32,401 nt of DNA from assembly GCF_001194135.2 (NCBI RefSeq), contig NC_068985.1, forward strand, positions 105,130,983 through 105,163,383, written 5' to 3'. This document shows, piece after piece, positions 1-17,777 of the stretch. The DNA comes from Octopus bimaculoides. Lineage: Eukaryota. The notes beneath the pieces are model-generated. The model worked only from the letters and a program-made list of their open reading frames with translations, did not search any database and was not told where the DNA came from. The translations under genes and the position numbers were made by a program. Position 1 is the first letter of the stretch, and every line of letters starts with the position of its first letter.

Positions 1-615
1 AACGCTTCGACCAAAGATTATTTGTTCACTGAGTTATAATCTATACCACAGGATATCATTCGAGACACAATTAGTAATGAAGAGAAATCTCTATTAATAT
101 GAACCACACAGACAATACTAAATATTTGAAGTTGTCCCAAATTTCTTGTCTCGATCTAAGTAAATGTATATATTACAGTGAATTCTTTTGGTGGAGCACA
201 AAGCAGTTATTGTTCTAATCTTGCTTTGAATATGATATTTAGATGTTTTACAAACAAAAGAAGTACATACATTTCAAACTAAGGTGCGAATCAAAATAGT
301 TATCAAACGTTTGAAAGTCATATTAAGGAATTCTTTGAGCTTCTTTTTTTGTTCAACGGGATAATTCTATATTGCGTGTTTGTAGCACAAAAATATGCAA
401 ACTTTCACTGACTTAGAAAATAAAAATGGCCTCAATGTAAAATTTGCAGATGAAATCATACGTAAATGAATTTGCTCAAATATATTTGCACACGTAAACT
501 CATTTCTGCACTTAACAAATGGCATCCTTGAAATCTCATTCGAATTATCTGCGCACATGGTTCTACATAGTTTAAGGTTATGCTGATAACGTTCACTAAG
601 TAATTTATAACTATT

Positions 616-662
616 TTTCTCTCCTTGTTTCTCTCCTTGTTTCTCTCCTTGTTTCTCTCCTT
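616..662. repeat. 12-bp tandem repeat (TTTCTCTCCTTG) x ~4 in a pyrimidine-rich tract
   Basis: Units start at 616, 628, 640 and 652, followed by a degenerate CT/T tract to ~720. Confidence 0.9.
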
Positions 663-1104
663 TTTTTTTTTCTCTCTCTCTCTTTGTTTCTTTCCTTGTT
701 TCTTTCTGTGTTCCTTTCTGTGGAAGAGCGTAGGCTCCAAACGTTAAAGTCTTTTTTCAATTCCCGAGCGTTATACTAATACATCTGTTTGTTTTCTACA
801 CCACCTGTCTTCGTCTGTTGTTTTTTTTTTTTTGTGAATTCTCCCTAACTTATAACTATGTTTATGGAAGTAGAGACAACGGTTCTAAATATACCCTAAA
901 TTGAGTGAATAATAAATTACAGTGACTACAAAATTCCTTTCCTATATTACTAAAAGAGTAAAAATAGTGAATAAACGGGAGGGTTCAGAATTGTAACTAG
1001 ATACTTCATTGTATAAGAGGTGGCAGTCTATACCTTCAGCCACTTCAGAAATATTTAGATAAATGATAATACTAATTATATTTTTTTATTTCTAACCATT
1101 TCAG

Positions 1105-1315
1105 GTAATTTAATCCGTAAGAGTGTGGAAACCCTAACAGAAGATGAAGTTCTCAACCTACAAGTAGCTCTTCGAGCCATGCAGGATGATGCAACTCCGA
1201 CTGGTTTCCAAGCCATCGCAGGCTACCATGGTGAGCCAGCTGACTGTAAGGCACCAGATGGAAGAACTGTGGTCTGTTGCTTGCATGGTATGCCAACGTT
1301 CCCTCTTTGGCATAG
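1105..1315 (+). CDS. Hc: Hemocyanin, first exon of functional unit a (copy 1), 3' end truncated by gap
   Basis: Acceptor TTTCAG ends at 1104 (phase 1). From 1107 it reads NLIRKSVETLTEDEVLNLQVALRAMQDDATPTGFQAIAGYHGEPADCKAPDGRTVVCCLHGMPTFPLWH. CuA histidines H41 (1227), H60 (1284) and H69 (1311), C47/C57 disulfide and C58-H60 thioether pattern of molluscan hemocyanin. Closely matches the octopod FU-a N-terminus as I recall it. Confidence 0.96.
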
Positions 1316-1415
1316 NNNNNNNNNNNNNNNNNNNNNNNNNNNNNNNNNNNNNNNNNNNNNNNNNNNNNNNNNNNNNNNNNNNNNNNNNNNNNNNNNNNNN
1401 NNNNNNNNNNNNNNN
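1316..1415. other. Assembly gap of exactly 100 N (probably unknown size) joining two opposite-strand hemocyanin exon fragments
   Basis: Exactly 100 N, whereas most other gaps have irregular sizes (338, 94, 317, 888, 240, 263, 349; one of 10). Confidence 0.9.
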
Positions 1416-1494
1416 TGCATGGCTCGAAGAGCTACTTGTAGGTTGAGAACTTCATCTTCTGTTAGTGTTTCCACACTCTTACGGATTAAATTAC
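1416..1494 (-). CDS. Hc: Hemocyanin exon 3, start of FU-a (copy 2), truncated by gap
   Basis: Reverse complement matches 1105-1183 at 78/79 nt. The single difference is synonymous (Thr ACC/ACA, 1133 vs 1466). Acceptor AG at 1496-1495. Encodes (G)NLIRKSVETLTEDEVLNLQVALRAM. Confidence 0.95.
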
Positions 1495-2495
1495 CTGAAA
1501 TAGAAAGAGGTTTGAATTAATAATATTATTTGTATTGCATCAAGTCTTATTTCGTTAAAATATTTTCGGATTGAATTAATTAAATGTTTTCTGTATGAGA
1601 TCTCTAGACGATCAAAGGATTTTACATTTGATTTATATTAGGGGTGCTTCAATAATTTGTTACCAGGGTGATGACAGGCTTATCAATTCATATGTGTTGC
1701 ACCGCAGTTCTTTACATATTTATTTTTAGTATGGGTATAATATGTAAATCTTGCAATAAAATCTAGAATTGAGCCGTAATAATCAAGTGATCGAGTAGTC
1801 ATTTGAAATGTATATTTATTTTGACAGTTAACATTATTGGGAGGGAGATTCTGTACAAATTTGCCATACTGGAAGCGATAAGCGATAAGAGGCTAGGACA
1901 TCTTTAAATATATATATATATAAATTATAGTGAATTTTCTCCATTGTCAAGTGTGTCTCGAATCTCTTTTGTTGTAAATCATAATTCCGAACAAAAAAAG
2001 AAAAAAAAAATGGTGAGCGCCTTTCGATTCGCTCTCATTGATCTATTTTGTATTTTGTACTTGTACTCACAGCTCACTCTTATTCGTAATGTTCCAGCGT
2101 TTGTTTTACAAATTTGCTGGCGAATTTCTTTGGATGGTTTTCAGCAGATGAGATAAAGATGCTAGCGATGTGAGACAAGACCCTGAGTAGTGCAAATATT
2201 GAAGAGCTAACTGTAAAGATGACTCTTCAAAGTGTACGCAATGAATATTCCAAAAGGTGCTTTTTTATATATCATATTTAGAGAGTGAATAGCGATGTGA
2301 TTGCGAATAATAAATAGCAGTCAAGGATTCAGAATTAGCTGATCTTATCAAGACTCCTGGTGAAGAAATGAATCCCTTTCTGCAGTCTACTTTAACAGAT
2401 GTACATAGATTTATATTCAAGCAAACTAACTTAACCATCTTCTAATTGGCTATTACTTGCGATGTTAAAATATGCAATATGGAAATATTGGTTAC

Positions 2496-2520
2496 CTTCT
2501 GCACTTCCGCATAGCAAGAA
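2496..2520 (-). CDS. Hc: Hemocyanin exon 2, 25-nt signal-peptide micro-exon (FLLCGSAE-G)
   Basis: Minus strand reads ttatttctag|TTC TTG CTA TGC GGA AGT GCA GAA G|gtaacc. Phase-0 start fits exon 1 and phase-1 end fits exon 3, completing a hydrophobic signal peptide with A-E-G|N cleavage at the known mature N-terminus. Confidence 0.88.
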
Positions 2521-2729
2521 CTAGAAATAAATTAGAAATTTAGTTTTTAATTATGTCAACAAATAAGTCATTTTAAAAGTTGTATTAAATATGAATTGAG
2601 ATAAAGCAATAGAAACGTGTAAATTTTTATTTCTAACATTTACCGTTTAAAAGATTTGTAACATGGAAAATAGTGGTTTCTAAAATAGGAAAAAGGTGAG
2701 AAATGGAAATGGAGGATGTTTATTAATAC

Positions 2730-3868
2730 AGCGAGTCCCAACTTCTTGGCTAATACTTTATTTTATCGATCCCGAAAGGATTAACGAGAAAGTTGACCTC
2801 GGTGGGGTCAGAATGTAAAAAAATACCTAACTAAAACCACAAACCACTGTTTTCCAACGCTCTAACGATTCTGCTAATCTTTCTAATTATGGCATGATGC
2901 CAGTAATTTTGAGGTCAGCGAGCTCGATTGCATCGAACCCAATGTTCAGCTAGGACCTGTTTTATCGACTCCAGAAAGAATGAAAGGCAAAGTCGACCTC
3001 GTCAGTATTTGAATTCAGAACATAAAGACTGCAAAATAATAGTTTCAAATTTTGGCACAAGGTCAGCAATTGAACTCCGAATGTAAAGGCGGACGAAATG
3101 CCGCTAAGCATTTTGCCCAGAGTGCTTAAGATTCTGTCAGCTCGCTGCCTCCAGTGTGCAAAATATTGGTTTTAAATTTTGGCACAAGGTCAGCAATTTC
3201 AAGGCAGGTGGCAAGTAGATTGGATAGACCTCGGTATTCAGCTGGTACTTATTTTATCGACCTCGAAAGGATGGAAGGGCAAGTTGACATGAGCGGGATT
3301 TGAACTCAGAAACGTAAAAATGGACGAAATGTGAGAAAGCCGATAAGCATTTAGCCCGGTACGGTGGCGATTCTACCAGCTCGCTGCCTAACAGTAAAGC
3401 AATATTGGTTTCAAATTTTGGTACAAGGCCAACAAGTTCAGGATAACGGGTAAGTCGATTACATCGACCACACTGTTGAACTGGTTCTTTTTCTATCGAC
3501 ACCGAAAGGATGAAAGGCAAAATAAGCCTCCGTGTGATTCGAACTCAGAATATAAAGAAGGATGAAATGCCGCTAAGCATTTTGCTCAGAGTGCTAACGA
3601 TTCTGCCAGCTCGCTGCTTTCAATGTGCAAAATATTTATTTCTTTATTACCTACAGGAAGATAAACATAGAGGGTACAAACAAGGACAGACAAAGGGTTT
3701 AAGTCGATTACATAGACCTCAGTACGTAACTGGTACTTATTTAGTCGACCCCGAAAGGATGAAAATCACAGTCAACCTCGGCGGAATTTGAACTCAGAAC
3801 ATAACGGCAGATGAAATACCGCCAAGCATTTCGCCCGACGTGCTAACGATTCTGCCAGCTTGCCACCC
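2730..3868 (-). mobile_element. Array of six copies or fragments of tRNA-derived SINE family B inside hemocyanin intron 1
   Basis: Repeated GGCGG/AGCGAGCTGGCAGAATCGTTAGCAC...GTTCTGAGTTCAAAT...CTTTCATCCTTTCGGGGTCGATAAAATAAGTACCAG on the minus strand at about 2730-2880, 2884-3030, 3041-3149, 3168-3389, 3401-3618 and 3637-3868. A-box and B-box-like motifs present. Confidence 0.9.
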
Positions 3869-3948
3869 TTCAATGTGCAAAATATTAAGAAAAAATGTTG
3901 ATAATTTCGATACGTGCATAGAAAGTTAAAGAATTCTGTTTAACTTAC

Positions 3949-3987
3949 GGCGAAGACGATCGCAAAGAGACAAGAAATCTTCATCAT
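3949..3987 (-). CDS. Hc: Hemocyanin exon 1 coding part (MMKISCLFAIVFA)
   Basis: ATG ATG AAG ATT TCT TGT CTC TTT GCG ATC GTC TTC GCC followed by a consensus donor GTAAGT (3948-3943). Basic N-region plus hydrophobic core, directly downstream of TATA/Inr. Confidence 0.9.
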
Positions 3988-4028
3988 GACTTCTTCAAGT
4001 CAGTGTTCAGTCTTCAGCTGAAGGCAAC

Positions 4029-4062
4029 ACTGATGAAATCTGTGAAATGCTCCCCTTTTATA
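4029..4062 (-). promoter_or_regulatory. Hemocyanin core promoter: TATA box and initiator
   Basis: TATAAAAG at 4062-4055 and TCAGT at 4033-4029 (A+1 = 4031) on the minus strand. The TATA box starts 31 nt upstream of the predicted start, leaving a 44-nt 5' UTR. Confidence 0.82.
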
Positions 4063-5132
4063 ACAATTTCCGTAATGCTTTGTTGGCAAAACAACATGTG
4101 CAGGACACGTTTAACTCTTTCAGACGCTGACAAATCATAATTTTGACATATCACACTAACCTGAAAATCAAATTTCGTAAAATCTTTCTCAAAGAAGATA
4201 GATCGCTATCTTCTAGAATTCCACTTTGAATATTGAATTTCAGTTTTGCTTTTGAAATTATATGTTTGTAAATTTGATTCAATGTTACGGTTGTGATTTA
4301 TAATCAATTTTCCTGTCGTGGTGAGAAATATAAGTTTTGAGAATGCGGAATACACTATATTGGTTTCGATTCCTGCTTGAAACCAATTCCCATTACTGAA
4401 GCTGCTACTCGCTTCGCAAAAAATGCTTTTGTCGACAAGATTTGAAAGAAGCATTGAAATCTAGCAAACTTCGCACTTATTTTCTGTGTTTAGTACACCC
4501 CGTAGTTAATTGTACCTCTCGAACAAATTGATTTTAGCTAAGCAGTTTGGCCGTTTAAGAGTTATAATGCTTCGTTGGTGACATATTATAGTGGAATACT
4601 AGTATCAAAATACTAAAGACTTCTGAGATAGCTCACGGGTAACTCTGTTCATAAATTAGTTGAGACCACGGCATTTAATTTCTAGTAACACCTAATACTC
4701 TTCCTTTACTAAGCTTATGGCTTTGGGAAACCCCGAGCGTCATACTTTCAATTTGCTTTAAATATAAGTATGTTGTGTCAAGAATTATTTAATGATAATA
4801 TTATTAAGGAAGAAACTCGGAATTACAAGTTGGTTTTTAAAGATACATTTATACATTAAATAAGCAGAAATAAGTTATCCTCCAACTATTGTGTGTTTTG
4901 ACTGATGGGTTAAAGACGATATGGAGCGTTTAAAAATACTGACCGAGTAACAATCTCTGAATCCCTAAGAGATATTAGCATAGTCTTTACTTATGTTAAG
5001 TTGTTGAGACAAAAAAAAAAAAAAATTATACAAATAAGGCATGTGATGTGTGGAATGTGATGAACTCTATAAAACATTTTTACTGCTTTAGTAACATTGT
5101 GAAAGTAAAATCTAACTCGGTATAGATGGAAT

Positions 5133-5507
5133 GTTGTTGGCACTCCGTCGCTTACGACATCGAGGGTTCCAGTTGGTCCGATCAACAGAATAGCCCGCTC
5201 GTGAAATTAACGTGCAAGGGGCTGAGCATTCCACAGACACGTGTACCCTTAACGTAGTTCTCGGGGATATTCACCGTGAACAAGGCTGACCTTTTGAAAT
5301 ACAGGCACAACAGAAACAAGAAGTAAGAGTGAGAGAAAGTTGTGGTGAATGAGTACAGCAGGGTTCGCCACCATCCCCTGCCGGAGCCTCGTGGAGCTTT
5401 AGGTGTTTTCGCTCAATAAACACTCACAACACCCGGGCTGGGAATCGAAACCGCGATCCTATGACCGCGAGTCCGTTGCCCTAACCACTGGGCCATTGCG
5501 CCTCCAC
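5133..5507 (-). mobile_element. Full-length tRNA(Arg)-like SINE, tail type 1
   Basis: A box TGGCCCAGTGG, B-box-like GTTTCGATTCCC and a (CAA)-type end. Closely similar to 12204-12591. Possible degenerate 12-nt TSD TATAGATGGAAT (5121) / TATGCATGGAAT (5508). Confidence 0.92.
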
Positions 5508-5811
5508 TATGCATGGAATAGCAAGTGCAAGATATGAAACTTAACTTAGTTTCAGTTAATTATATTGTTTGTAGTAAATTAAATATTTCCACTTTCACGC
5601 TAGGAGACACTTAAAACTTGATATGAAAACGTTGAGGTATTGAAACATGATAAACCATTTTCACTGGATTTTAACTAGAATACACATGCAAAGCAGTAAT
5701 GTTTAAGTGAATTAAAGGGCTTCAAAGAATACAGTTCTAAGTATTTCGATATGGCTCTGTTGTAAGTTATGTATATAAAAGAAGCATATAGAGTCAGTGA
5801 GGAGAAGTGTT

Positions 5812-5978
5812 TAGTCAATCCCATCGTTCCTGTACTTGACTGGTACTTATTATATCGATCTTGAATGGATGAAAGGCAAAGTTATCCTCAGCAACGTTTC
5901 AGCTCAAAGCTTAAAGGACCGGGATAAATCCATAAAGCATTTTGTTCGACGCTCAATCGATTCCATCAATATACCACC
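5812..5978 (-). mobile_element. Degenerate SINE family B copy
   Basis: CTGGTACTTATTATATCGAT...GGATGAAAGGCAAAGT...AAGCATTTTG matches family B. Confidence 0.75.
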
Positions 5979-6653
5979 CTGATTCATAATGTCATAATAC
6001 TATTAATAAAAGTAATATTATTAAAAGTATTGTTACTCAGAGTTGTTAATATTACGAACGCTCGTCATTAAATTTCAGACTTAACCTCTGAATCTCAGAT
6101 ATACTTTTGGAATAATTATTCTAATATAAAATGAAAATGCTTTTTAAAAATAATTCGAACACATCTTTCTCGTGTTTGTTAACAGATTTCTTAAATTGAT
6201 TTTTCGCATATTTTTGGAATTGCAATATATTTACAATTTCCCTATCACCCTTCTGAAAACAGTTGTTGATTTAGTGCAGCGCTGATTCGGGTCAGAGAAT
6301 TTAAAGACCTTGTACCTATGATACGAAGACTTATTTAAATTTCAGTTTTTATAGACATGACCTCCTTTCTGATCAATATGTGTAAGAACTTTTCATTTAT
6401 ATTTCAACATTTTAGAGCCTATAACGAATTTATCTTACTATTTTGATAAAGTAAATAAATACCTATTCCTTTTATCAGTAATTTTGTTAAAAAAGTAACG
6501 ATTTAGATTTTTCTTTTCCCTTTTTCCTATCAAATAAACATTTGAATCACCGTACTGTTTTATAAAGACAAAGGAAGATTATGGTTGTTTAATTATTGTT
6601 GTTCATTTTGGTTTTCATGATTCTTTTAAGATGTTAAAGTTGAGATTTATAAA

Positions 6654-6730
6654 GGCGGTGAGCTGGCAGAAACGTTAGCACGCCGGGCGAAATGCTTAGC
6701 GGTATTTCGTCTGTCTTTACGTTCAAATTC
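6654..6730 (+). mobile_element. SINE family B head, 3'-truncated, abutting a LINE
   Basis: GGCGGTGAGCTGGCAGAAACGTTAGCACGCCGGGCGAAATGCTTAGCGGTATTTCGTCTG...GTTCAAATTC, then LINE ORF2 sequence. Confidence 0.9.
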
Positions 6731-9240
6731 AGTGCCTTGACAGTTTGTCTCGAACAGTTAACGCCGTACGGTAGCACTGCCAAGCCAAGGATTTCTGGTA
6801 ATTATCCAGATACCCCGGCCCGAACGTTCTCCTGAACAGGTTGATCAACTGATTTTCATCGTAGCCCAGGGTCTCCCCCAAGGCGTCTTCGGACATAAAG
6901 TCTACTAACCCGCTATAAAATTCCGCGGTGGTACTCCTGCAGCCGGCATTGCCCGCTCGAGAGAGNNNNNNNNNNNNNNNNNNNNNNNNNNNNNNNNNNN
7001 NNNNNNNNNNNNNNNNNNNNNNNNNNNNNNNNNNNNNNNNNNNNNNNNNNNNNNNNNNNNNNNNNNNNNNNNNNNNNNNNNNNNNNNNNNNNNNNNNNNN
7101 NNNNNNNNNNNNNNNNNNNNNNNNNNNNNNNNNNNNNNNNNNNNNNNNNNNNNNNNNNNNNNNNNNNNNNNNNNNNNNNNNNNNNNNNNNNNNNNNNNNN
7201 NNNNNNNNNNNNNNNNNNNNNNNNNNNNNNNNNNNNNNNNNNNNNNNNNNNNNNNNNNNNNNNNNNNNNNNNNNNNNNNNNNNNNNNNNNNNNNNNNNNN
7301 NNNGCCTTCCCTAGCAAGGATAACGCCCGCCCAGACCAAGTCTGGGTTAGAGTAGTCACCCTGCTGGTTACCTCGCTCCAAGTTTTCTCTGTCTGAAGGT
7401 CTGGACCAAACCAGATCCCGAGCAGCTTAACAGGACCTTCCGTCCAACGACGTTATTAGACGTCATCGGATTGCCCCTCCAGGTGCCGAATTGGAAACCG
7501 ACTGACTTGTCCTTCTTAACGTTTGCTCCTGCCACCGCCTCGTAACTTTTGATGGCCTCTTCCACCACTGGAAGCTGGCCCTCATCTGCCACGATGATGG
7601 AGATGTCATCCGCATACGCCGTAGCTCCTCTTCCACACCACAGATCATTCAGAGCCCCCTAGTACCTTCAACTTCCGTAGCAATGGCTCAAGAGCCAACA
7701 CATACAGAAGCGAGGACAGGGGACACCCCTGACGCACTGAGCATTCGATCCTGAATGGTTTCGAGAAGAAACCATTCACTTTTACGACAAACTCGATGTC
7801 GCTGTACAAAACAGCAATCCAACCGCGGAAGGTCGGGCCCAGGCCAGCCTTCTCGATGACCGCTGCCAAGTACCGATGGTCGACGCTATCGAATGCTTTA
7901 GTCTAGTCTAACTGTACTAGTGCCCCTCCTACGCCAGAAAGTTTCCCTAACCTCTCTAAGGAGTAGTGTATTAGGTGGAAATTGTCGCGGATCGACCTGC
8001 TCGGGATGGCGCAATTTTGCGCCCCCAACAAGTCTGTCCACGACCCGCGCTAACCTTTTCGCTAGCACCTTGGCCAAAATCTTTAACTCTGCGTTTAGCG
8101 GAGTTATGGGCCTAAAATTACTTATCTCGTCCTCCTTGCTCGGGTCCTTTCTGATCAACGTCACTACCCCTCTACTTGCAGACCTGGGAATTCTCCCATT
8201 CTGCTGCCAGTTGGCGTAAACGCTGCCCAGCAGGTGCCCGAACAAGTCTGGCATGATTTTATAAAATTCGTAAGGTAGACCATCCAGCACCTCAATCACC
8301 TCCTCGGCTGTGATTGGCTCCTCAGAGCACTCAGCCTCTCGTGCCGAGGGACGCGGGCCACCAGACAGGAAGTCCCTAAGAGCCTCACCATGATCCAGCG
8401 TCCCGCTCCTCCCAAACAACTCAGCAGAGTGCTTGTAAAGTGTTTCACACATCTCGTCCCGTCCTTCGACCGAACACCCACTATCATCCACCAGAGACCT
8501 AATTGTGGCATAATTTCCACGCTGGGTTTCTACCGTGCGGGTTCATCCGGAAACACTAATCCCCTCACGGCCCAATGCTCGCACTTTAGCCCGAACTCTG
8601 CACCCCTTGTGTTTACTTTTCTACCAGTCGAGCCAACACTATCGATGCGTGCGTCAACGATAGCGTTAAAGTTAAACAACAGGGCGGCCATCACCTCACT
8701 CGGGTCTACTTCTGGTGGCACTTCTGCCACCTTTACACGTTAAGTCCGTCTTCCCATGTAGGTTGGCAGAAGCACCACATCTTCTGTTTTCAAGGAGCTC
8801 ACAGAGTACTCGCGGACCTTTTCCTCAGATGCGAAACGCACCTCAACAGTGCCATATGTCTTGCCCCTCGCAGTATACGTTACGTCCTTCCAAATCGGGG
8901 CAAGACATTTTTCAATTTTCTCTTTTCGAAATGTTTAAATAGTCTGTTTTTCGGATAGAATGATTTAAATATTATTGTTTTTCGGTCCTATTCAACCATC
9001 TTGGAGGAGAGTAATATTTTTATATCCCCATCCTCCTCTTTCATTCTCCTGAAATATTCCTGTAGTGTCTCTACATGAATATCAATGTTTTCGGTTGCCA
9101 CAGCGACAATCGCCGAAAACTTTTTTACAGGGTATAATTTCATGTATAATTTCGACCGACATACTCTAGCGTACTGGGAAGAGGAAAGCGGTTAGGAAAG
9201 CAGTAAAATCAGGTGTTGTGGAACGCCGAGAGCACGGCGA
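6731..9240 (-). mobile_element. Defective L1/Tx1-type LINE: ORF1 N-terminal half joined to ORF2 linker plus reverse transcriptase, with no endonuclease domain and a truncated 3' end
   Basis: RT motifs DGLPYEFY, NFRPITPLNAELKILAKVLAKRL, AFDSVDHRYL, QGCPLS (7731-7714), YADD (7616-7605), VKLLGIWFG and LAWQCYRTALTVRDKLSRH. ORF1-like EKCLAPIWKDVTY..GTVEVRF at ~8900-8830. Frameshifts and stops present. The 5' boundary is approximate. Confidence 0.9.
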
Positions 9241-9249
9241 GATACTATG

Positions 9250-10850
9250 GAGTCCTGGTCATCTACAGCAGCAAGAAGGGTCTCTAGCCGTAATGGTTTT
9301 TTTGTTCCACTAGGTCAAGGTTCTTTCTGCCGAGAGAGCGCGAGTGTTCTTGTACAACAGCTCTCGACACTTAAAACAACTACACGCACAGGTACCTGCC
9401 CTTCTCAGCCTTCCAGAATTGTCAACCTCAAGTTCTGCAGAGAGAGGGGAGTGGCGAGAGGGACAGGTGGCAGTAACCACTAGAAGTACTAGTCACAAGC
9501 CTGCACGTAGACAGCCTGCAGACCATCGGTCGCTTTTCTTCGTATTGGACATCGGAGAATTTCAGCAGCATCCCAGGTGATTGAGCAGCCTTTTTGGGGC
9601 AGCACTGCTCACCCTAGTAAGGAAGCAGCCTAGAAAACATAGCCAGACTCCTTTCAGCCAAATACAGTAGGAGTTCCAGTCCAACCTTGATGACGAGTTC
9701 GAGATGATAGGATCACCAACTGGTGGACCAGAAGAAAAGTAGAACCAGTTCAAAAAAGTCTTCACAGAGACTGGTTTGATGGCGACGACGCCTAGTTGAT
9801 CTGTCCGTATTAATAGCTGCATACCCTGTCCTAACCAATAATGCTTCTGGATTCTCTGTCTGTAGAATACTGGTTTTCTCATCTATGTCGAAGGGAAACG
9901 CAGCCACTAACCAGCAGATTTTGACTTCTGGTGATACGTTTAGTATTCTTACTTTGAATACCCTTCGAATAAGGTAAATGAGGATGCGGGTGAGTTCGTC
10001 ACTCGTTAGGGTGACTGTTGAGTGATTTTTGGCCTCCTCCTTTGAGGCGAACCTCACTTCGACAGTCCCAGATTTTCCCCCATGGCTATATAGGTTTTGC
10101 TCTTCCAAACTGGTCGTAAACATTTTTCAATCTGCTGGTGCATTGCCTGCTCTACTTTTCTTTTTGCTTCACTTCTTTCATATAGAACTGTCTGCAAATT
10201 AGTTTCTTGGTGGATAGATCTAGGAACATTCTCCAACATTTCTCCAACATACATTTTGCACTTTTAAGTTCATTTTCGTTTATAAAAATGTCTTCACATA
10301 CTTGTCGCTTCGCGTCGGCAAAACCTCTCACAACGGATTTGCATGGTTCTTTTTTCTTGTTCTTGTTTTTTTCGTTAATGATGTTGTTGTTGGTGGTGGT
10401 TTGCTGTTGCCACTGGCGGTGGTAGTGGAGGTGGCAATATTCTCGCTAGTGTTTTTGCTTTTTGTGGTCATTGATCGCTACTGTTGTTCCTGTAATGGTT
10501 GTTCTGAGATTTTTAGCATCAGAAAGTTACTTTCACACATTTCACGTACTATATTGTCGCTGTAGCTGTTTCTGGTGCTGCTGCCACTACTGCTGCCACT
10601 ACTGCTGCCACTACTGCTGCCACTACTGCTGTTACTGACTTTTTCAATTTGGCTGTTCTGTTCTGCGGATACCTAGCTGTCCTTTTCATCGTACGAATGA
10701 TCCTTTTTTAAGCAAAAATTGAGCCGTGTCTTTGCTAAACAATCCCTAAATTAGCCTCTAAGGGCTACAGATGGAGAAATAATAACCAACTTCTTAAGAT
10801 CCTGGTTATTTATCTTATAAGGATAAAGAAAGTTCAATATATAACTTTGT
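9250..10850 (-). mobile_element. Second, diverged L1/Tx1-type element represented by a disrupted ORF1 only
   Basis: ATG at 10689 gives MKRTARYPQNR...SSSGSSSG. The segment IEKCLRPVWKSKTY...GTVEVRFASKEEAK...KVRILNVSPEV is homologous to the ORF1 remnant at 8900-8690. No RT detected. Boundaries approximate. Confidence 0.7.
10579..10631. repeat. 12-bp tandem repeat (TGCTGCCACTAC) x ~4.4
   Basis: Exact units at 10579, 10591, 10603 and 10615. Encodes SSSG repeats in the minus-strand ORF1 frame. Confidence 0.95.
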
Positions 10851-10928
10851 GTTACAATATGAATAACAATAAACTTACGGGAGCGATGTGGAATGCGTGT
10901 CGATAGACGAACAAGAACAAGAACAAAA

Positions 10929-10930
<2 letters not shown>

Positions 10931-10963
<33 letters not shown>
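10931..10963. repeat. (ATT)n microsatellite at the 3' end of the adjacent SINE
   Basis: About 11 units. Confidence 0.95.
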
Positions 10964-10965
<2 letters not shown>

Positions 10966-11176
10966 TCTTCCTACTAAAGATACAAGGCCTGAAATTTTGG
11001 AAGAGGAGACTAGTCCACTACAGCGACCCCAGTACTCGAGAGGTACTCTTTTTATCAACCCCGAAAGGATGAAAGGCAAAGTCGAACTCGGCAGAGTTTG
11101 AACTCAGAACGATGTCGGATGAAATGCTGCCAAGCATTTTGTCTAGCACGCTAACGATTCTCCCAGCTCGCCGCCG
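10964..11176 (-). mobile_element. Full-length SINE family B copy with a third tail type
   Basis: Family B head and core, with tail CAAAATTTCAGGCCTTGTATCTTTAGTAGGAAGAATT(AAT)n. Confidence 0.88.
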
Positions 11177-11178
11177 GT

Positions 11179-11350
11179 AATGATAATAATAATAATAATG
11201 ACGATGATGATGATGATCATCATGATCATGATNNNNNNNNNNNNNNNNNNNNNNNNNNNNNNNNNNNNNNNNNNNNNNNNNNNNNNNNNNNNNNNNNNNN
11301 NNNNNNNNNNNNNNNNNNNNNNNNNNTCATCATCATCATCACCATGATGT
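11179..11350. repeat. (AAT)n/(GAT)n/(CAT)n microsatellite spanning gap 11233-11326
   Basis: Trinucleotide runs on both sides of the gap. Confidence 0.85.
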
Positions 11351-11647
11351 TAGTGGTGATAATGGTGATTTTCTTCAGTTTCAAATAACTTACCGGATTG
11401 CTATCTTGACATTACGGTTACATATATTTTGAGAAAATGTTACTGAGAATGAAATATGCGCTAGATCACTAATGATAAAAACCAAATGGAAATGGTGATA
11501 TGCTTTCTGTTTTTTTCTATTTACAAGTTGCTATTTGTCAATGTTTCTGCTGATTAAAGAAGCACAATATAACAAGATTTACCATATTTAATTGTGTATA
11601 ATTCGCATATAATTTTGTAGTTTGTTTATAATTTTATACTTGATTTT

Positions 11648-11795
11648 AACCGAAAAAAACCGGGGTGCGACTAATACATAGAGCAAAGCTAAAATTATGA
11701 AAGCAAATAAATAAAGAAAATAAAATAAAAAAAAACGCGTCTGCCGAGATTAAACATTAAATTAGGGGTGCAACTTATATACGGATAAATACATT
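11648..11795. mobile_element. Possible degenerate end of a Tc1/mariner (pogo/Tigger-like) DNA transposon
   Basis: GGGGTGCGACTAATAC and GGGGTGCAACTTATATACGGATAAATAC resemble pogo-type subterminal and terminal repeats as I recall them. No partner end found. Confidence 0.3.
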
Positions 11796-12203
11796 AAATA
11801 TTGTAGCTTATTGTCTCTACAAGAGCAAAGTAATTTTATAAAGTTTCATAATGATTTATAGATATATGGAGGTAAAATTAACCGCTCATATGTTATTTTT
11901 TTCCACTCCCAGGAAACTTCTGGAAAAACAGCAATTACAAAAATTAATTCACAAAGAAACTTTTTCGTTTAAAACCATCATAATGTTGTAACTGCTCAAA
12001 AGCTTCATAAATTAGTAAGGCGACTACATTTTCCCCTTAAAAGCATAACGTAACAAACTTAAATATTGTAGTATAATCAAACTGTCCCTTCAACAAGAGC
12101 AGAACAATTGTATAGTTTTGTAATAATTTAGAAAAACTTGGCGGTACATGTATGCACATGTGTCTGTTATTTTGTTTTTACCGTAGAGTAATAATGGTAA
12201 AGA

Positions 12204-12591
12204 GGAGGCGCAATGGCCCAGTGGTTAGGGCAGCGGACTCGCGGTCATAGGATCGCAGTTTCGATTCCCAGACCGGGCGTTGTGAGTGTTTATTGAGCGA
12301 AAACACCTAAAGCTCCACGAGGCTCCGGCGGGGGATAGTGGTGAACCCTGCTGTACTCTTTCACCACAACTTTCACTCACTCTTACCTCCTGTTTCTGTT
12401 GTGCCTGTAATTCAAAGGGTCAGCCTTGTCACACTGTGTCATGCTGAATATCCCCGAGAACTACGTTAAGGGTACACGTGTCTGTGGAGTGCTCAGCCAC
12501 TTGCACGTTAATTTCACGAGCAGGCTGTTCCGTTGATCGGATCAACTGGAACCCTCGACGTCGTAAGCGACGGAGTGCCAACAAACAACAA
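12204..12591 (+). mobile_element. Full-length tRNA(Arg)-like SINE, tail type 1
   Basis: A and B boxes, GGACTCGCGGTC anticodon-arm relic, tail CTGGAACCCTCGACGTCGTAAGCGACGGAGTGCCAACAAACAACAA. Reverse complement of 5133-5507 with scattered differences. Confidence 0.93.
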
Positions 12592-12993
12592 TAAAGCTAT
12601 TTTGACCAATAGTGATCCTGATAGGAACATAGGTTTTTCATTTGAAAAAAAAAATGTGCAGCTGTTCAAACTCTCGTATATCGGCTGAGTGATTTTATTC
12701 TACCTAAAATAGTTCGAATTTACAAGAGTCTCTTACAATTAATCTTTTCTAGTCTTACGAAATTGCAACTCATCAATTATCACGATTCTGTTCTTCCTTA
12801 CCAGCAGCTAATTTTACTCATAATAATGAAAAATTGCATCCCCACTCTATCCAAAATCTATATGAGTTATCAACAGTATTTGAAATAAACATAATTTCAA
12901 GACTTTGGTCAGAATCGAAACGATGTCTAAAAGACGCCATAGAATGTAACTATTTATTCCCTGATTTCTCTTATGTATCTTCTTAGTCTGCAT

Positions 12994-13140
12994 CCGATGG
13001 GCGTCCACTCAGTTTCTGTCGATCAAATTTCACGTAGAAGGTATTGGTATAGGAAAGGACACTCAAATCATGTGAGGGTTCGATCCAGTAACCACGTGGT
13101 TGTAAAGCAAACTTTTTAACCACACAGCCGTGCCTGTATC
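12994..13140 (-). mobile_element. Degenerate head of SINE family C (CORE-like)
   Basis: TTTAACCACACAGCCGTGCCTG head and CAGTTTCTGTCGATCAAATTTCAC match 17778-18108. Confidence 0.7.
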
Positions 13141-14167
13141 CTGTTTTTTTTTTTTTTTTAGATATTGGAGAGTTGCAGGGTTTTATAGGGTTTGTATCAG
13201 ACTTTAAAAAAAATTTTTTTTCTCTCGCTATTTTCGATGACGTGGTCCTTCCGTTTTTCGTTAAATGAATGATCTATGGCCAATGAATAATGATGTTACG
13301 ATGTTCAGGGATTGATTAGTATGTTGTATATTTAGATGTTGTTGTTTAACTCTATTTTAACCTTGATACAGCAGATCTATAATCAAAGGTATTTCAGCGA
13401 CAGCTAGCTCGTCTTCTTTTAGGAATATGTAAGGCTAAATTATCTGATGGGTTCTGTAAGATAATATACCCTGCCACTTCTAGTAGGTTCTGAGGCCACA
13501 TAAAGGCTCTCATGCAGGTTCGTCTTAGGAAATGCTTGAGTTACTGGCTGCATTAACATAATACCACAAAGATGTGATTGGGTTTTTATGGTCTCTGGGT
13601 ATGTATTATTAATGCTACCACCATGAGCCGCTAGCACAGGGTTCCAGGATAAATGGTGATAATAAGAATAGCAACATCACTAACAATAAAAGCGCTATAG
13701 TTATACTATTTGGATAGCTTTTGACTCTCCTGAGTTCATCCACCCTTTGACAGGCTTTGTTTTTCGTCCTGTAAGGTGTCTAAGGTGTGTAATATTCTCC
13801 CTTTGCCTTGCAAAGGACTTTTGGAAGTCTTCCATAGTCACCAACATGAAAGTCCTCCAGTAGAGAATACATAGGCTATTCTAGTCGATGCACATAGTCA
13901 ATCCAGGCCATCGTCGCTCACACACTCAAATAGCCTTCTTCAAAAATCGAGAGTTGCTTTCATGCCAATGTGCTTGTCTTGGAGATGTACTACGGTGAGC
14001 GCCTAACAACATTCTAGATGCCAAATGTCCAATCTCGTTTTCCGCTTGAACTATGATTGTAGCTAGGGTACGAAGACGAATTGCAGAGAAACGTGTTGTA
14101 TGAAAGATGCCCTCACCAGTTGTCCCTAACACGAGATGGATTGACCTGTTGTGGCTAGATCTGTTGG

Positions 14168-14726
14168 AAGTATATAATGGTCATGATGTTAATTGAAACG
14201 TATGTGCGGCCGAGAAGCTTAAGGTACTGAACTTGACGGTCAATGTTTTGAATAGGAAGAAAGAAACATTTTCTTCTTGTTTTATTTCAAAGCATTCAAA
14301 TTAAGGCTAGCACAACTCACTACAGCTAATTCTTTCGTCACAGAACATCACTCCTCTCTTTATGATGATGTAAATAAACAGACCAAAACCAGTTGTCAAC
14401 TGTGTAAGGTATAAATATAAACACAAAGGCATACACATACAAACATACTCATATTCGACGAGATTCCACATATTTCCTGACTATTAAATTTACTCACAAG
14501 GCATTGTTCGGTCCTATTAGATAGAGCGTGGCCTCAAAGGTGCAAGTATATAATGGTCGTGGTAGTAACGGCAACTTTCGTTGAGAAGCTTAAGTTATCG
14601 AATCTGATAGTCAATGTTTTGAATAAGACGAACGTAAGATTTTCTTGTTTTCATGCATGGAAATTCAAATTAGATTCAACACAAATCACTACACCTAATT
14701 CTTTCGTCACAGAACGTTGATCCTCT
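14168..14726. repeat. Pair of diverged ~185-bp direct repeats (14168-14357, 14544-14726) flanking a SINE family C fragment (~14410-14543)
   Basis: Shared collinear blocks AAGTATATAATGGTC, GAGAAGCTTAAG, GTCAATGTTTTGAATA and CTAATTCTTTCGTCACAGAAC. Confidence 0.85.
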
Positions 14727-14908
14727 GATATTTTGTCCTTACTCATATAAGTGATGACTTACGAATGCTCAACAGAAACAATAATGGAGTCAATCTCCTT
14801 TGTCTGGAGAGCAGACTGCGGAGACCATGCCCGCTACAACCATCTCCAAGGCTTAGGTAGTAAAAAGACTGATTGGGTCGGTGATATGCAATTGACTGAA
14901 TGAAATAT

Positions 14909-15102
14909 CTCATTACATATTTCAATTGATTAAGTACTACGAGGTGTACCTTTGTGTCAAACCCATTTACATTTTACAGGTTGTACATTCTTTCAAACGT
15001 CGCTCATTACATGTTTCAATTTCAATTGATTAAGTAGTACGAGGTGTACCTATGTGTGAAACTAATTTAAATTTTACAGGTTGTACATTCTTTCAAAAGT
15101 CG
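14909..15102. repeat. Tandem duplication, units of 94 and 100 bp
   Basis: 14909-15002 and 15003-15102 share CTCATTACAT, TACGAGGTGTACCT and ATTTTACAGGTTGTACATTCTTTCAAA. The second unit has an extra TTCAAT. Confidence 0.93.
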
Positions 15103-15629
15103 GAACTAGTTCTTATACTCAGAAACTTTCGCAGTTAAACTTGTGAAACAATATTGTGTTTCTTAAAAAGAGAAATTACATCAACATGTTGTAGAGTGTG
15201 TTACCATTAAGCAATCGAATGATTATGCCGTGAATTTTCAAGGTTGTACATGGAAGACACAACCTGAGATTCGAGAGTTAACTTTGAGATTTGTGAATGT
15301 AAACACAACTCTTTGAACAAATATGACTCTCTTTTGATTGTCATTACCATTACTACTCGTGTCATTCAGTATCATATGTTTTCTTTCTTTTATTTTCTCC
15401 TTATTAATAATTTTAATTTTTTTTATTTACTACAATTTCAACTGGTCATATCTAAGTTTATGTAGCATTTTGTTGAATTACTTTTGATTCCTCACCATTG
15501 ATAATCTTAATTATAATTTAATTTCAATTATTACTACTTTACTTAGAAATATTTAAATTATATACCCTTAATTAGTCTCCTATTGTTTTGTTTAGTATCT
15601 GTATGTAGTTGATGTTTTGTGTGTTTGTG

Positions 15630-15780
15630 TGTTTTGTGTCTGTGTTTACGTTTGCCGTCGTAAAAGCCAGATTGAAATAAGTACTGGAGTCGATATCATT
15701 GATTAAACTCTTGAAGTGAGTATTCTAGTATAGCCTCAATCCTATATCTGAAGCTAGTAAACTAAAATAATGGCAATGAT
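15630..15780 (+). mobile_element. Degenerate 3' part of SINE family C
   Basis: GTGTCTGTGTTTACGT...AAATAAGTACTGGAGTCGAT resembles the tails at 17778-17940 and 21822-21935. Confidence 0.55.
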
Positions 15781-15989
15781 AAAGCAGCTGACCTTTCCAT
15801 GACATTCTCAAACATAATGTTAACTTCAATTAATACATAAGACCACCATAAAGAAGGAAACCCGAATGGCCACCACATACATCCCTTCTCCGATGTGATA
15901 AAAATCTCTTATTTAATCATAGCGAGAAACTACATAGAAATTACATAGAAATTGTTTTAGAGTAGAGTTTCTTACAAAGGGATACATTG

Positions 15990-16310
15990 TAGGGTTTCTG
16001 TTCAGTTTGAGGCTGTCTTACAGTAATTACTGTAGCATTACGTTTGATGTTAAAAATGTGATAATTAACCAAATGCTGATGTAGTGGACTGCTTTCATGT
16101 TAAGAACACTTTCGAGAAACTTTGACAGTTATTGTATATTACCGTGTGATAATACACTACAAGTTACGTAATCTCTAGAGAAATTAATCGTGGAGTAGTT
16201 GACAGAAGTCAAGTTCTTGCCGCCAACAGTAACCTTTAAGTAATTAGTAGTCCTTAGTGGAATGTCTGAAGGAACATCCTTGGCCCCATTATTGTTCATA
16301 AAAGCTCCCC
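15990..16310 (+). mobile_element. Ancient CR1/L2-group LINE reverse transcriptase relic
   Basis: Frameshifted fragments DRSQVLAAN and VVLSGMSEGTSLAPLLFI resemble the RQ.V..NG and SGVPQGSVLGPLLF RT motifs. Confidence 0.5.
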
Positions 16311-17160
16311 TAAGAGTAACAGATTATTATAACAACTAACGCTAATGATATTAAAATATGGACGAAAATCGACAGTTCTAATGGTGTAAAAACAAAGAGA
16401 AACATCAGTCCATTTTAAAACACGTATTTTGATACACAAGAACAAAAGATTAGTCTCAAAATCTAAATGTTTTGTAACTGGGAAATTATTAAGACACATC
16501 GTTTCAATTGTAAATTTATAAATTACTTATATGGTAATAATTCGCAGACAACTGGTCGATTGAATCCGAGAAACATATAGATTGAGAGAACTCAATCATG
16601 CATGCTCTATGGAACATAATTGTTTTCAGTCGTGTAGATTATTTCTCATGATTATTGTCTCCAGTGGTTCAAAATTGTAAATCTATATCCGTTAGAGAAA
16701 AGAAGTGAAGGAATATGTATTAATTTATACACGAGTAATCTTGGAACGAAATGCACAAAACCTTGATTTGATCGATCCCAGTTCATAAGAGGTGCTCATT
16801 TTATAGATCTCAATGAGATAACAAATTTGATAGGACAGAACTAAATATTATAAAGCCCACTCCACCACCAGCAATACGACGTAATCAAGTAATTTACTTA
16901 AATATATTGATTTATAATTGAATTTAAAGTTTGATCGTACTGGTTACTTTCAATATGAAACAGTTTTTGTTACTATAACAATTTTGCATGGTGAAGAGGT
17001 TGAATACTATAGCCAATGTTTTATTTTTCAGTGTTTATTTACTATCCTTTAAGTTTCCAGTTCAAATTCCGTTGAGGTTAAAGGTGCCTTAATCGTCCAC
17101 ACCAAATGATCACTAATTATATAGTGAAGCCGATTTAATGGACTGTATCCCTCTTTGTGT

Positions 17161-17488
17161 GGAAGCGCAATGGCCTAGTGGTTAGGGCAGCGGACTCGCA
17201 GTCGGAGGATCGTGGTTTCGATTCCCAGACCGGGCGTTGTGTGTGTTTATTGAGCGAAAACACCTAAAGCTCCCCGAGGCTCCGACAGGGAGCGGTGGCG
17301 ACCCCTGTTGTACTCTTTCGCCCCAACTTTCTCTCACTCTTTCTTCCTGTTTCTTGAGTAAAGCTGCGATGGACTGGCGTCCCGTCCAGCTGGGAAGGAG
17401 GGAACACATACGCCATAGAAACCGGGAAACCGGGCCCATGAGCCTGGCTAGGCTTTAAAAGGACGTATAAATAAAATAAAAATAAAAA
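17161..17488 (+). mobile_element. tRNA(Arg)-like SINE with the same ~194-nt head as 12204 but a different tail (type 2)
   Basis: Aligns with 12204-12397 up to CCTGTTTCT (17354), then continues GCTGCGATGGACTGGCGTCCCGTCCAG...GAAACCGGG...CATGAGCCTGGCTAGGCTTTAAAAGG with an (AAAAT)n end. Confidence 0.9.
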
Positions 17489-17599
17489 TCCATCTTTGTG
17501 GCCTTGTACCAATAATTTTTCAGGACATGCGCTATATCAAAAAATCAAAAACGAAACAAAAAACTTTTGTAACTTTGCTACCGCAATGTAAATATTATA

Positions 17600-17767
17600 A
17601 GTCAAATATATCGACCCCAGTACTTAACTGGTACTTATTCTATCGTTCACCGACAGGATGAATGGTCAAGTCGACCACGGTGGAATTTGAACTCAGAGCG
17701 TAAAGACGGACGAAATGCCACTAAGCATTTTGCCCGGCGTGTTACCGATTCTGCCAGCTCACCGCCT
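17600..17767 (-). mobile_element. SINE family B copy lacking the distal tail
   Basis: Family B head and core motifs. Confidence 0.9.
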
Positions 17768-17777
17768 TATATAATAC

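What the first reader, a model, noticed from the sequence alone, without database searches (positions are those of the whole stretch)
1081..1560. Two hemocyanin paralog 5' ends converge on a 100-N gap: exons ~99% identical, introns unrelated
Seen: the FU-a exon start on + (1105-1183) and on - (1494-1416) differ by one synonymous base, but their upstream introns share only the last 7 nt (ATTTCAG). Known: a molluscan hemocyanin subunit is a chain of 7-8 functional units of ~400 aa each, so neither gene fits in 100 bp, and octopods carry very similar subunit types. Inferred: alleles would have near-identical introns, so these are two genes whose exons were recently homogenised (gene conversion) or tightly constrained. 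The gap either hides a tail-to-tail pair of complete genes collapsed by the assembler or is a false scaffold join through the shared exon. In both cases the locus is probably mis-annotated.
Basis: partly seen in the sequence, partly recalled or inferred. Interest (0 to 1): 0.75.

Follow-up and report, generated by a model that had tools for sequence, protein, structure and literature searches.

The report
Hemocyanin paralog starts, falsely joined scaffold
Two facing copies of the first hemocyanin coding exon are real starts of two different genes of a three-gene tandem cluster in Octopus bimaculoides, but their head-on meeting at a 100-N gap is a scaffolding error caused by the assembler collapsing the near-identical gene bodies.

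Summary
Window 1105-1183 (+) and 1494-1416 (-) are the start of the FU-a exon of an A-type hemocyanin. They are 78/79 identical, the one difference is synonymous, and the introns just upstream are not alignable.

They are not alleles and not a hidden tail-to-tail pair. Both have signal-peptide exons about 2.5 kb upstream. By flank synteny with O. vulgaris, which has three same-strand tandem genes followed by a CCDC15-like gene, the minus copy is the 5' end of gene 1 and the plus copy is the 5' end of gene 3.

The gap at 1316-1415 is one of four exactly-100-N joins within 50 kb. Each join cuts a hemocyanin gene. The block carrying the plus copy (C5:105094750-105132297) is inverted and misplaced. 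Moving and flipping it makes all four junctions consistent. Only about one fragmentary gene body exists for three genes, so the bodies were collapsed.

The real biology is an old triplication whose gene bodies evolve in concert. High identity begins within about 11 nt of the FU-a acceptor in both species. The signal-peptide exons, introns 1-2 and the last ~170 coding nt keep one-to-one orthology. This is an ordinary mechanism in a new instance. Interest is modest.

The parts
1..1104 (+). 3' part of intron 2 of copy 'A', the ortholog of O. vulgaris gene 3. It contains a dispersed SINE-like insert at about 620-850. Signal-peptide exon 2 of this copy probably lies in the 1160-N gap just before the window. 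Signal-peptide exon 1 (MMKIPCLFAIVFA) is at C5:105129578-616, outside the window.
   Evidence: It is 84.5% identical to O. vulgaris gene-3 intron 2. The upstream SP1 region is 89% identical to gene 3, against 82% and 78% to genes 1 and 2.
1105..1315 (+). First 211 nt of the FU-a exon of copy A (codons G23-H92). It follows a phase-1 acceptor, and the contig ends inside the exon.
1316..1415. An exactly 100-N placeholder gap. It joins two original scaffolds: S4, ending at 1315, and S5, starting at 1416. This is a false join.
   Evidence: four exactly-100-N gaps lie within 50 kb, while the other gaps have irregular sizes. Searches give orientation and synteny.
1416..1494 (-). First 79 nt of the FU-a exon of copy 'B', the ortholog of O. 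vulgaris gene 1. Its contig ends exactly 50 nt after its only private base, at exon position 29.
1495..2495 (-). Intron 2 of copy B, with a GTAACC donor and a TATTTCAG acceptor. It is single-copy in the genome.
   Evidence: it is unique; 88.7% over 1120 bp to O. vulgaris gene-1 intron 2, with no comparable hit to genes 2 or 3.
2496..2520 (-). Signal-peptide exon 2 of copy B (FLLCGSAE plus the first base of a Gly codon). It is one codon shorter than in genes 2 and 3.
   Evidence: Read. The identical FLLCGSAE exon lies at -991 in O. vulgaris gene 1. The region is 70% identical to the A' exon-2 region.
2521..3948 (-). Intron 1 of copy B. It holds a tandem array of SINE-like units of about 240-250 bp at 2771-3890.
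3949..3987 (-). Coding part of exon 1 of copy B (MMKISCLFAIVFA), followed by a GTAAGT donor.
3988..25407 (-). Upstream region of gene 1. It is reverse-collinear with O. vulgaris OX597818.1 from about 96828900 back to 96794176.
20529..20816 (+). A decayed FU-a-like pseudo-exon. It is 37% identical to residues 73-169, has in-frame stops, and points the opposite way to gene 1.

Best explanation
The window comes from the A-type hemocyanin cluster of Octopus bimaculoides, on chromosome-scale scaffold C5. The cluster is an old tandem triplication: gene 1, gene 2, gene 3, all on one strand, followed by a CCDC15-like gene.

Gene conversion keeps the gene bodies nearly identical. The converted stretch runs from about 11 nt before the FU-a exon to about 170 nt before the stop codon. 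The promoter, the two signal-peptide exons, introns 1-2 and the 3' end lie outside it and have diverged.

The short-read assembler could not separate the three bodies. It produced about one fragmentary body, plus separate scaffolds for the unique 5' and 3' flanks. Each of those scaffolds ends a short way inside shared sequence. The Hi-C scaffolder then strung these small scaffolds together with 100-N placeholders. In doing so it put the block S3-S4 (C5:105094750-105132297) in the wrong place and the wrong orientation.

As a result, the 5' end of gene 3 (window 1105-1315, +) abuts the 5' end of gene 1 (window 1494-1416, -).

Shown here: the identity of the exons, the signal-peptide exons, the one-to-one orthology of the flanks, the inconsistent orientation, and the single-copy gene body. 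Inferred: that the 100-N gaps are Hi-C joins, and that gene conversion, rather than another homogenising process, is the mechanism.
For: 1. The genome is O. bimaculoides.

2. There are three 5' ends, each with SP exon 1. A is at 105129578 (+), A' at 105083891 (-) and B at 105134904 (-). There are three FU-g 3' ends: g1 at 105081234-82106 (-), g2 at 105094474-647 (-) and g3 at 105108339-109534 (+).

3. O. vulgaris has three same-strand genes and then CCDC15. O. sinensis has a fused 5821-aa model plus P0004, followed by CCDC15.

4. The unique flanks map one to one onto O. vulgaris. B and all of S5 match the gene-1 upstream region. The g2 flank matches the gene-1 3' flank (88%, 2963 bp, the only hit). 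A' matches the gene-2 5' region. The g3 flank matches the gene-2 3' flank. A matches the gene-3 5' region (89% against 82% and 78%). The g1 flank matches the gene-3 3' flank plus CCDC15.

5. The gene-1-specific exon 2, FLLCGSAE, is identical in both species.

6. Four exactly-100-N gaps each cut hemocyanin sequence. The layout S1, S4rc/S3rc, S2, S5 makes every junction read as a 5' end, then missing body, then a 3' end, all on one strand.

7. There is evidence of collapse. S3, S4, C117085, C10464 and C1991 overlap at 100% identity. The A-type FU-a body exists only once, in tiny unplaced contigs. C107195 is an exact 208-bp duplicate of window 971-1178.

8. There is evidence of concerted evolution. 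In the first 79 nt of the exon, A and B differ at 1 site, but each differs from its ortholog at 3-4 sites, and A and B share states at positions 59 and 71. In a 424-nt FU-g segment, O. bimaculoides genes 3 and 2 are 99.1% identical, against 95.3-96.9% to any O. vulgaris copy. In the last 174 nt, orthologs are closest (97.8% for gene 1) and paralogs are 84-90%. In O. vulgaris, the 96-97% identity between gene 1 and genes 2/3 starts at -11 from the FU-a exon and spans the internal introns.

9. The chromosome assembly was made by adding Hi-C to the older shotgun assembly (PMC9068888).
Against: No reads, Hi-C maps or long-read O. bimaculoides assembly were available. The corrected order therefore rests on internal consistency and on synteny with O. 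vulgaris and O. sinensis.

The O. bimaculoides paralog comparisons use short stretches (79 nt and 424 nt). These could be slightly biased by assembler consensus.

The proximal part of intron 2 does not separate genes 2 and 3 well: 765 against 658 bits for A, and 896 against 857 bits for A'. The A and A' assignments therefore rest mainly on the SP1 region and on scaffold continuity.

A tail-to-tail pair of identical hemocyanin genes does exist in Argonauta hians. Such an arrangement is therefore not impossible in octopods.
Confidence: 0.87

Rival explanations
1. The layout is real. A convergent (tail-to-tail) pair of complete, near-identical hemocyanin genes lies in the gap and was collapsed by the assembler.
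For: In Argonauta hians (GCA_054771915.1), the same 2916-aa hemocyanin is encoded twice, tail to tail. The arms are 99.89% identical over 13.8 kb, starting about 430 nt upstream of the FU-a exon, while the outer 5' parts are only about 96.7% identical. The size of the 100-N gap is arbitrary.
Against: The 3' ends that are orthologous to the genes of A and B are already assembled elsewhere, on the minus strand. They have the expected downstream flanks: g1 plus CCDC15, and g2 plus the gene-1 flank. A sits on the same scaffold and strand as the 3' end of gene 2, as expected in a tandem array. O. vulgaris has all three genes on one strand.
Confidence: 0.05
2. O. bimaculoides has a genuine species-specific inversion or transposition of the 37-kb block S3-S4. 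The assembled order would then be true, and genes 2 and 3 would be broken.
For: The scaffold as deposited shows this order. Nothing in the sequence itself contradicts the joins, because they are N-gaps.
Against: It would disrupt two of three genes for the main oxygen carrier. All four breakpoints would have to fall exactly at scaffold ends inside collapsed repeats. Every junction is a placeholder gap with no sequence support.
Confidence: 0.04
3. The two copies are the two haplotypes of one gene, with a structural variant in intron 2.
For: The exons are nearly identical, and a diploid short-read assembly can split haplotypes.
Against: Each copy has its own ortholog in O. vulgaris, with about 89% non-coding identity, whereas the two copies are only 70-83% alike. 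Exon 2 differs by a codon in the same way in both species. The B intron occurs only once in the assembly. A third 5' end, A', also exists.
Confidence: 0.02
4. One copy is an isolated duplicated exon or pseudogene fragment without a functional gene.
For: Only 79 nt of the minus copy are assembled. A decayed FU-a relic does exist at 20529-20816.
Against: Both copies have an intact acceptor, signal-peptide exons with good splice sites at conserved distances, and open frames. The truncation coincides with contig ends.
Confidence: 0.02

Closest known systems
Octopod A-type hemocyanin genes: O. sinensis XP_029636170.2 ('OvH Type-A' of Schaefer et al. 2021, PMC7931591), O. vulgaris CAI9723234/235/237, and Enteroctopus dofleini OdH (O61363)
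   Same: The precursor has a signal peptide plus seven functional units, FU-a to FU-g. A phase-1 intron precedes FU-a. The assembled exon is 94% identical in protein sequence. The flanks are collinear, including the downstream CCDC15-like gene.
   Different: In the O. bimaculoides assembly the three genes are represented only by their unique ends plus one fragmentary collapsed body. Schaefer et al. could reconstruct only the Type-R gene for this species, which here is C70530 plus C33596.
Concerted evolution of tandem gene duplicates by gene conversion (a textbook phenomenon; named from my own knowledge)
   Same: Within the gene body, paralogs in one species are more alike than orthologs between species. 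The flanks keep their orthology, and there are sharp tract boundaries.
   Different: The 5' boundary sits within about 11 nt of an exon acceptor and is shared by two species. I found no paper in the library describing this for cephalopod hemocyanin.
Argonauta hians tail-to-tail hemocyanin palindrome (GCA_054771915.1, BAAFZT010000005.1: 19711082-19746400)
   Same: It has near-identical gene bodies, less similar 5' parts, and the convergent look that the finding describes.
   Different: There the convergence lies in contiguous, gap-free sequence with a spacer of about 2 kb. In O. bimaculoides it is produced by a 100-N join and contradicted by synteny.
Hi-C scaffolding mis-orientation or misplacement of small scaffolds in collapsed repeats (a general assembly artefact; named from my own knowledge)
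   Same: There are fixed-size placeholder gaps. The scaffolds are small, 4-33 kb. Their ends lie in multi-copy sequence where Hi-C reads map ambiguously.
   Different: Nothing unusual.

Membership tests
Molluscan hemocyanin, functional unit a (type-3 copper protein) | The sequence aligns to the N-terminus of the mature subunit (FU-a) better than to other functional units | tested here: met
   Sepia 6r83 residues 1-69 score 113.5 bits, against 66.8 bits or less for the other FUs. It is 94% identical to O. sinensis residues 23-92.
Molluscan hemocyanin, functional unit a (type-3 copper protein) | Start of the CuA site (HG...C..CC.HGM..FP.WH) | tested here: met
   YHGEPADCKAPDGRTVVCCLHGMPTFPLWH is present in copy A. 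The Pfam Tyrosinase score is only 20 bits, below the 22.6-bit cut-off, because just 38 domain residues are assembled.
Molluscan hemocyanin, functional unit a (type-3 copper protein) | Preceded by signal-peptide exon(s) and a phase-1 intron | tested here: met
   SP exon 1 lies upstream of both copies and SP exon 2 was found for B. The split codon is G|GT.
Molluscan hemocyanin, functional unit a (type-3 copper protein) | Continuous seven-FU open reading frame | tested here: inconclusive
   The gene bodies are collapsed or missing in this assembly. They are complete in O. vulgaris and O. sinensis.
Tandem paralogs under concerted evolution | The duplication predates the species split, shown by one-to-one orthology of the flanks | tested here: met
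   and the last 174 nt.
Tandem paralogs under concerted evolution | In the body, within-species paralog identity exceeds between-species ortholog identity | tested here: met
   99.1% against 95.3-96.9% over 424 nt. In the FU-a exon, 1 difference against 3-4 over 79 nt. The samples are short.
Convergent (palindromic) gene pair | The 3' ends of the two genes face each other across a spacer | tested here: not met
   The orthologous 3' ends lie at 105081234-82106 and 105094474-647, both on the minus strand. This feature is met only in Argonauta hians.
Scaffolding mis-join | The join is a fixed-size placeholder, and the flanking sequences cannot be parts of one consistent gene layout | tested here: met
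Scaffolding mis-join | Direct evidence from reads, Hi-C contacts or long-read contigs | not testable with these tools
   No read data and no second O. bimaculoides assembly were reachable.

The most novel reading that the evidence does not exclude
The octopus A-type hemocyanin triplet predates the O. bimaculoides / O. vulgaris split. Its gene bodies, introns included, are continuously homogenised. The 5' conversion boundary is pinned within about 11 nt of the FU-a acceptor in both species. Each gene keeps its own promoter, signal peptide and C-terminal ~58 residues. This would allow independent regulation of subunits that are otherwise interchangeable in the decamer. I found no description of this for cephalopod hemocyanin in the searched library.
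Probability: 0.5. Interest if true: 0.45.

Novelty: new member of a known kind. Interest (0 to 1): 0.3.

Why it matters
Practical value: the reference O. bimaculoides chromosome 5 scaffold misrepresents the main oxygen-carrier locus. Three genes are reduced to fragments, and a 37-kb block is inverted and misplaced. Expression, editing or selection studies that map to this locus will merge three genes or lose them.

Biological value: the locus is a clean example of concerted evolution with conserved tract boundaries in a respiratory protein. It bears on how cephalopods maintain several hemocyanin isoforms. However, tandem duplicates homogenised by gene conversion are a familiar phenomenon.

Tried and rejected
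1. I first read the collinear upstream similarity as possibly coincidental repeats. Finding SP exon 1 inside it showed that it is true paralogy.

2. My first model placed B upstream of the S3/S4 body, with only a flip of S3-S4. Flank-by-flank synteny corrected this to a swap plus a flip: B is gene 1, A' is gene 2 and A is gene 3.

3. A scan for B's exon 2 using the A' peptide failed. The exon was found through the 70% DNA alignment and by reading the sequence. It was confirmed by the identical exon in O. vulgaris gene 1.

4. The ORFs that the ORF listing draws through the N-gap (for example 1059-1520) are meaningless.

5. The Pfam hit on the 69-aa piece is below cut-off, but only because the piece is short.

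6. Literature searches for gene conversion in cephalopod hemocyanin, and for A-type/G-type isoforms, returned nothing relevant.

7. Because of the Argonauta palindrome, I took the hidden tail-to-tail pair seriously. I rejected it for O. bimaculoides on the orientation and synteny of the 3' ends.

8. The observation that B's contig ends exactly 50 nt after its private base fits a k=51 de Bruijn contig end. I could not verify which k was used, so this remains a remark only.

Full report
**Observation.** The window has an inverted repeat at 1091-1183 / 1416-1508: 93 nt, 96% complementary. From the shared acceptor ATTTCAG onward, 1105-1183 (+) and 1494-1416 (-) are 78/79 identical. The one difference is C at 1133 against A at 1466 on the minus strand. 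It changes ACC to ACA, both Thr. Upstream of the acceptor, ungapped identity falls to 60% over 20 nt and 34% over 100 nt. The plus copy runs 211 nt to the gap and the minus copy runs 79 nt. The gap at 1316-1415 is exactly 100 N. The two sides read the same codons in opposite directions, so nothing can be continuous or in frame across it.

**Identity.** The peptide NLIRKSVETLTEDEVLNLQVALRAMQDDATPTGFQAIAGYHGEPADCKAPDGRTVVCCLHGMPTFPLWH aligns best to residues 1-69 of mature Sepia hemocyanin, which is FU-a. The score is 113.5 bits, against 66.8 bits or less for the other units. It is 94% identical to residues 23-92 of the O. sinensis precursor, directly after the signal peptide MMKIPCLFAIVFAFWLCGHIAEG. 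The genome is Octopus bimaculoides. The 11,378-bp contig C70530 carries XP_014789836.1, and a 291-aa partial model sits on a contig of the length of C5. C70530 is a different paralog, 'Type-R', 72-73% identical.

**Both copies are true gene starts.** The signal peptide is split over two small exons. Exon 1 (MMKIPCLFAIVFA, donor GTAAGT) occurs three times on C5:
- A, at 105129578 (+), 2.5 kb upstream of the plus copy.
- B, at window 3949-3987 (-), reading MMKISCLFAIVFA, 2.5 kb upstream of the minus copy.
- A', at 105083891 (-), a third 5' end.

Exon 2 of B is at window 2496-2520 (-) and reads FLLCGSAE+G. A' has FWLCGHNAE+G. Exon 2 of A probably lies in the 1160-N gap just before the window. The 5' regions are collinear and homologous but diverged:
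- A against B: 83% around exon 1.
- A' against B: 77%, and 70% around exon 2.
- A against A': 79-96%.

So the introns are old paralogs, not unrelated DNA.

**The assembly around the finding.** In 133 kb there are 34 gaps. Four are exactly 100 N, at 105082108, 105094650, 105099091 and 105132298, the last being window 1316. The others have irregular sizes. The chromosome-scale assembly was made by adding Hi-C to the older shotgun assembly (PMC9068888). I therefore read the 100-N gaps as scaffolder joins; this is an inference. They delimit blocks S1 to S5, and every join cuts hemocyanin sequence:
- S1 ends in FU-g (residue 2626, minus strand).
- S2 runs from A' intron 2 to the last 58 codons of an FU-g (minus strand).
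- S3 holds FU-a 321-381 and the first part of FU-c (plus strand).
- S4 holds FU-b to FU-d, an FU-g, about 20 kb of spacer, and then A (plus strand).
- S5 starts with B (minus strand).

A second pair of facing hemocyanin fragments (different units: FU-g and FU-a) sits at the 105094650 join. The body pieces overlap one another at 100% identity: S3/S4, C117085, C10464 and C1991. C107195 is an exact 208-bp duplicate of window 971-1178. The A-type FU-a body occurs only once, in tiny unplaced contigs C2434, C42185 and C119330. So three 5' ends and three 3' ends share about one fragmentary body. The bodies were collapsed.

**Comparison with relatives.** O. vulgaris (OX597818.1) has three complete A-type genes on one strand. 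Their FU-a starts are at 96831052, 96859948 and 96912208. A CCDC15-like gene follows on the other strand. O. sinensis shows the last gene plus CCDC15, and a fused 5821-aa model on the same chromosome. The unique flanks of the O. bimaculoides pieces map one to one:
- S5, window 1416 to about 25400, is reverse-collinear with the upstream region and 5' end of gene 1.
- B intron 2 is 88.7% identical over 1120 bp to gene-1 intron 2 only.
- The g2 flank matches the gene-1 3' flank (88%, 2963 bp, the only hit).
- A' matches the gene-2 5' region.
- The g3 flank matches the gene-2 3' flank.
- The A exon-1 region is 89% identical to gene 3, against 82% and 78% to genes 1 and 2.
- The g1 flank matches the gene-3 3' flank and CCDC15.

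The eight-codon exon 2, FLLCGSAE, is identical in O. vulgaris gene 1, while genes 2 and 3 have FWLCG(Y/H)IAE. The last 60 nt of intron 2 group B with O. vulgaris gene 1, and A with genes 2 and 3.

**Corrected layout.** In gene orientation the order is S5rc - [gene 1 body] - S2rc - [gene 2 body, of which S3 and the front of S4 are fragments] - rest of S4 - [gene 3 body] - S1rc - CCDC15. On the scaffold, the S3-S4 block is inverted and sits on the wrong side of S2. After correction, all four junctions read as a 5' end, then missing body, then a 3' end, on one strand. The plus copy is the start of gene 3 and the minus copy is the start of gene 1. They are about 80 kb apart and co-oriented in O. 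vulgaris. As deposited, the start of gene 3 would point away from its own 3' end, which cannot be a working gene.

**Why the exons are alike and the introns are not.** The triplication is older than the species split, as the flank orthology shows. Yet the bodies are more alike within a species than between species.
- In the first 79 nt of FU-a, A and B differ once. Each differs 3-4 times from its ortholog. A and B share O. bimaculoides-specific states at positions 59 and 71. The C at position 29 is private to A.
- In a 424-nt FU-g segment, O. bimaculoides genes 3 and 2 are 99.1% identical, against 95.3-96.9% to any O. vulgaris copy.
- In the last 174 coding nt, orthologs are closest (gene 1: 97.8%) and paralogs are only 84-90%.
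- In O. vulgaris, the 96-97% identity between gene 1 and genes 2/3 begins at -11 from the FU-a exon and runs through exons and internal introns alike. Protein-level constraint alone cannot explain that.

This is concerted evolution, most simply explained by gene conversion, with conserved tract ends. The caveats are that the O. bimaculoides comparisons are short and come from a short-read assembly. Also, the minus contig stops exactly 50 nt after its private base, as expected if the contig ends where it merges with shared k-mers. The '99% over 79 nt' figure is therefore partly set by where the assembler stopped.

**Rivals.**
- A hidden tail-to-tail pair deserved attention, because Argonauta hians has exactly that. 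The same 2916-aa protein is encoded twice, convergently. The arms are 99.89% identical over 13.8 kb from about 430 nt upstream of FU-a, and the 5' parts are about 96.7% identical. In O. bimaculoides it is contradicted by the location and strand of the orthologous 3' ends, and by S4's continuity from the gene-2 3' flank into A.
- Allelic haplotypes are excluded by the separate orthologs, the gene-specific exon 2, a third 5' end, and the single occurrence of the B intron.
- A real inversion would break two hemocyanin genes and would need all breakpoints at placeholder gaps.

**Literature.** Schaefer et al. 2021 (PMC7931591) reconstructed only the Type-R gene for O. bimaculoides, and a Type-A gene only for the genome they called O. 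vulgaris, GCF_006345805.1. That agrees with the A-type locus being unusable in this assembly. I found no paper in the library on gene conversion among cephalopod hemocyanin genes.

**Verdict.** The two-gene and homogenisation inferences are supported. The convergent arrangement is an assembly and scaffolding artefact. The biology is a tandem family under concerted evolution, which is a known kind of thing in a new, tidy instance.

Noticed in passing
window 20529-20816 (+) (C5:105151511-105151798; a looser hit extends to 105152023): A decayed FU-a-like pseudo-exon. It is 37% identical to residues 73-169 and has several in-frame stops. It lies about 19 kb upstream of gene 1 and points the opposite way. 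It is a relic of an older hemocyanin copy.
   Followed up: partly
L041/L042 = GCA_054771915.1 BAAFZT010000005.1:19711082-19746400 (Argonauta hians): There is a tail-to-tail palindrome of two hemocyanin genes that encode the identical 2916-aa protein. The arms are 99.89% identical over 13.8 kb and the spacer is about 2 kb. Identity drops to about 96.7% upstream of about -430 from the FU-a exon. Two more hemocyanin genes, GAB1598689 and GAB1598691, lie on the same contig.
   Followed up: partly
C5:105094474-105094647 (-) / 105094751-105094933 (+), around the 100-N gap at 105094650: A second pair of hemocyanin fragments faces each other across a 100-N join. One is the FU-g end of gene 1 and the other is FU-a residues 321-381. 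It is the same kind of artefact as the finding.
   Followed up: yes
window 2771-3890 and window ~620-850: A tandem array of SINE-like units of about 240-250 bp lies in intron 1 of copy B. A dispersed SINE-like element, with more than 1,700 candidate copies genome-wide, is inserted in intron 2 of copy A but is absent from A'.
   Followed up: partly
window 7645-7902 (-), with adjoining ORFs at 7368-8542: A reverse-transcriptase fragment of a retroelement (Pfam RVT_1, 32.5 bits). A similar element lies at a comparable distance upstream of copy A, with 69% identity.
   Followed up: partly
G000:C28:3262412-3269005 (+): A further cluster of at least three hemocyanin/tyrosinase-like units with beta-sandwich domains lies on another chromosome. 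The units are 33-51% identical to FU-a. I did not examine it.
   Followed up: no
cluster 4 (Type-R genes): The second hemocyanin type is also multi-copy in relatives. O. vulgaris has CAI9741815/816 adjacent to each other. O. sinensis has two accessions for one identical 2923-aa protein. A. hians has GAB1607023/024/026. Near-identical duplicates therefore seem to be a general feature of octopod hemocyanin loci.
   Followed up: no
L044 (O. vulgaris), gene models CAI9723234 / 235 / 237: The annotated models span 28-40 kb, although the exon maps give about 12-13 kb from FU-a to the stop codon. The models appear to start far upstream, so the cluster may be imperfectly annotated in that genome too.
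   Followed up: no
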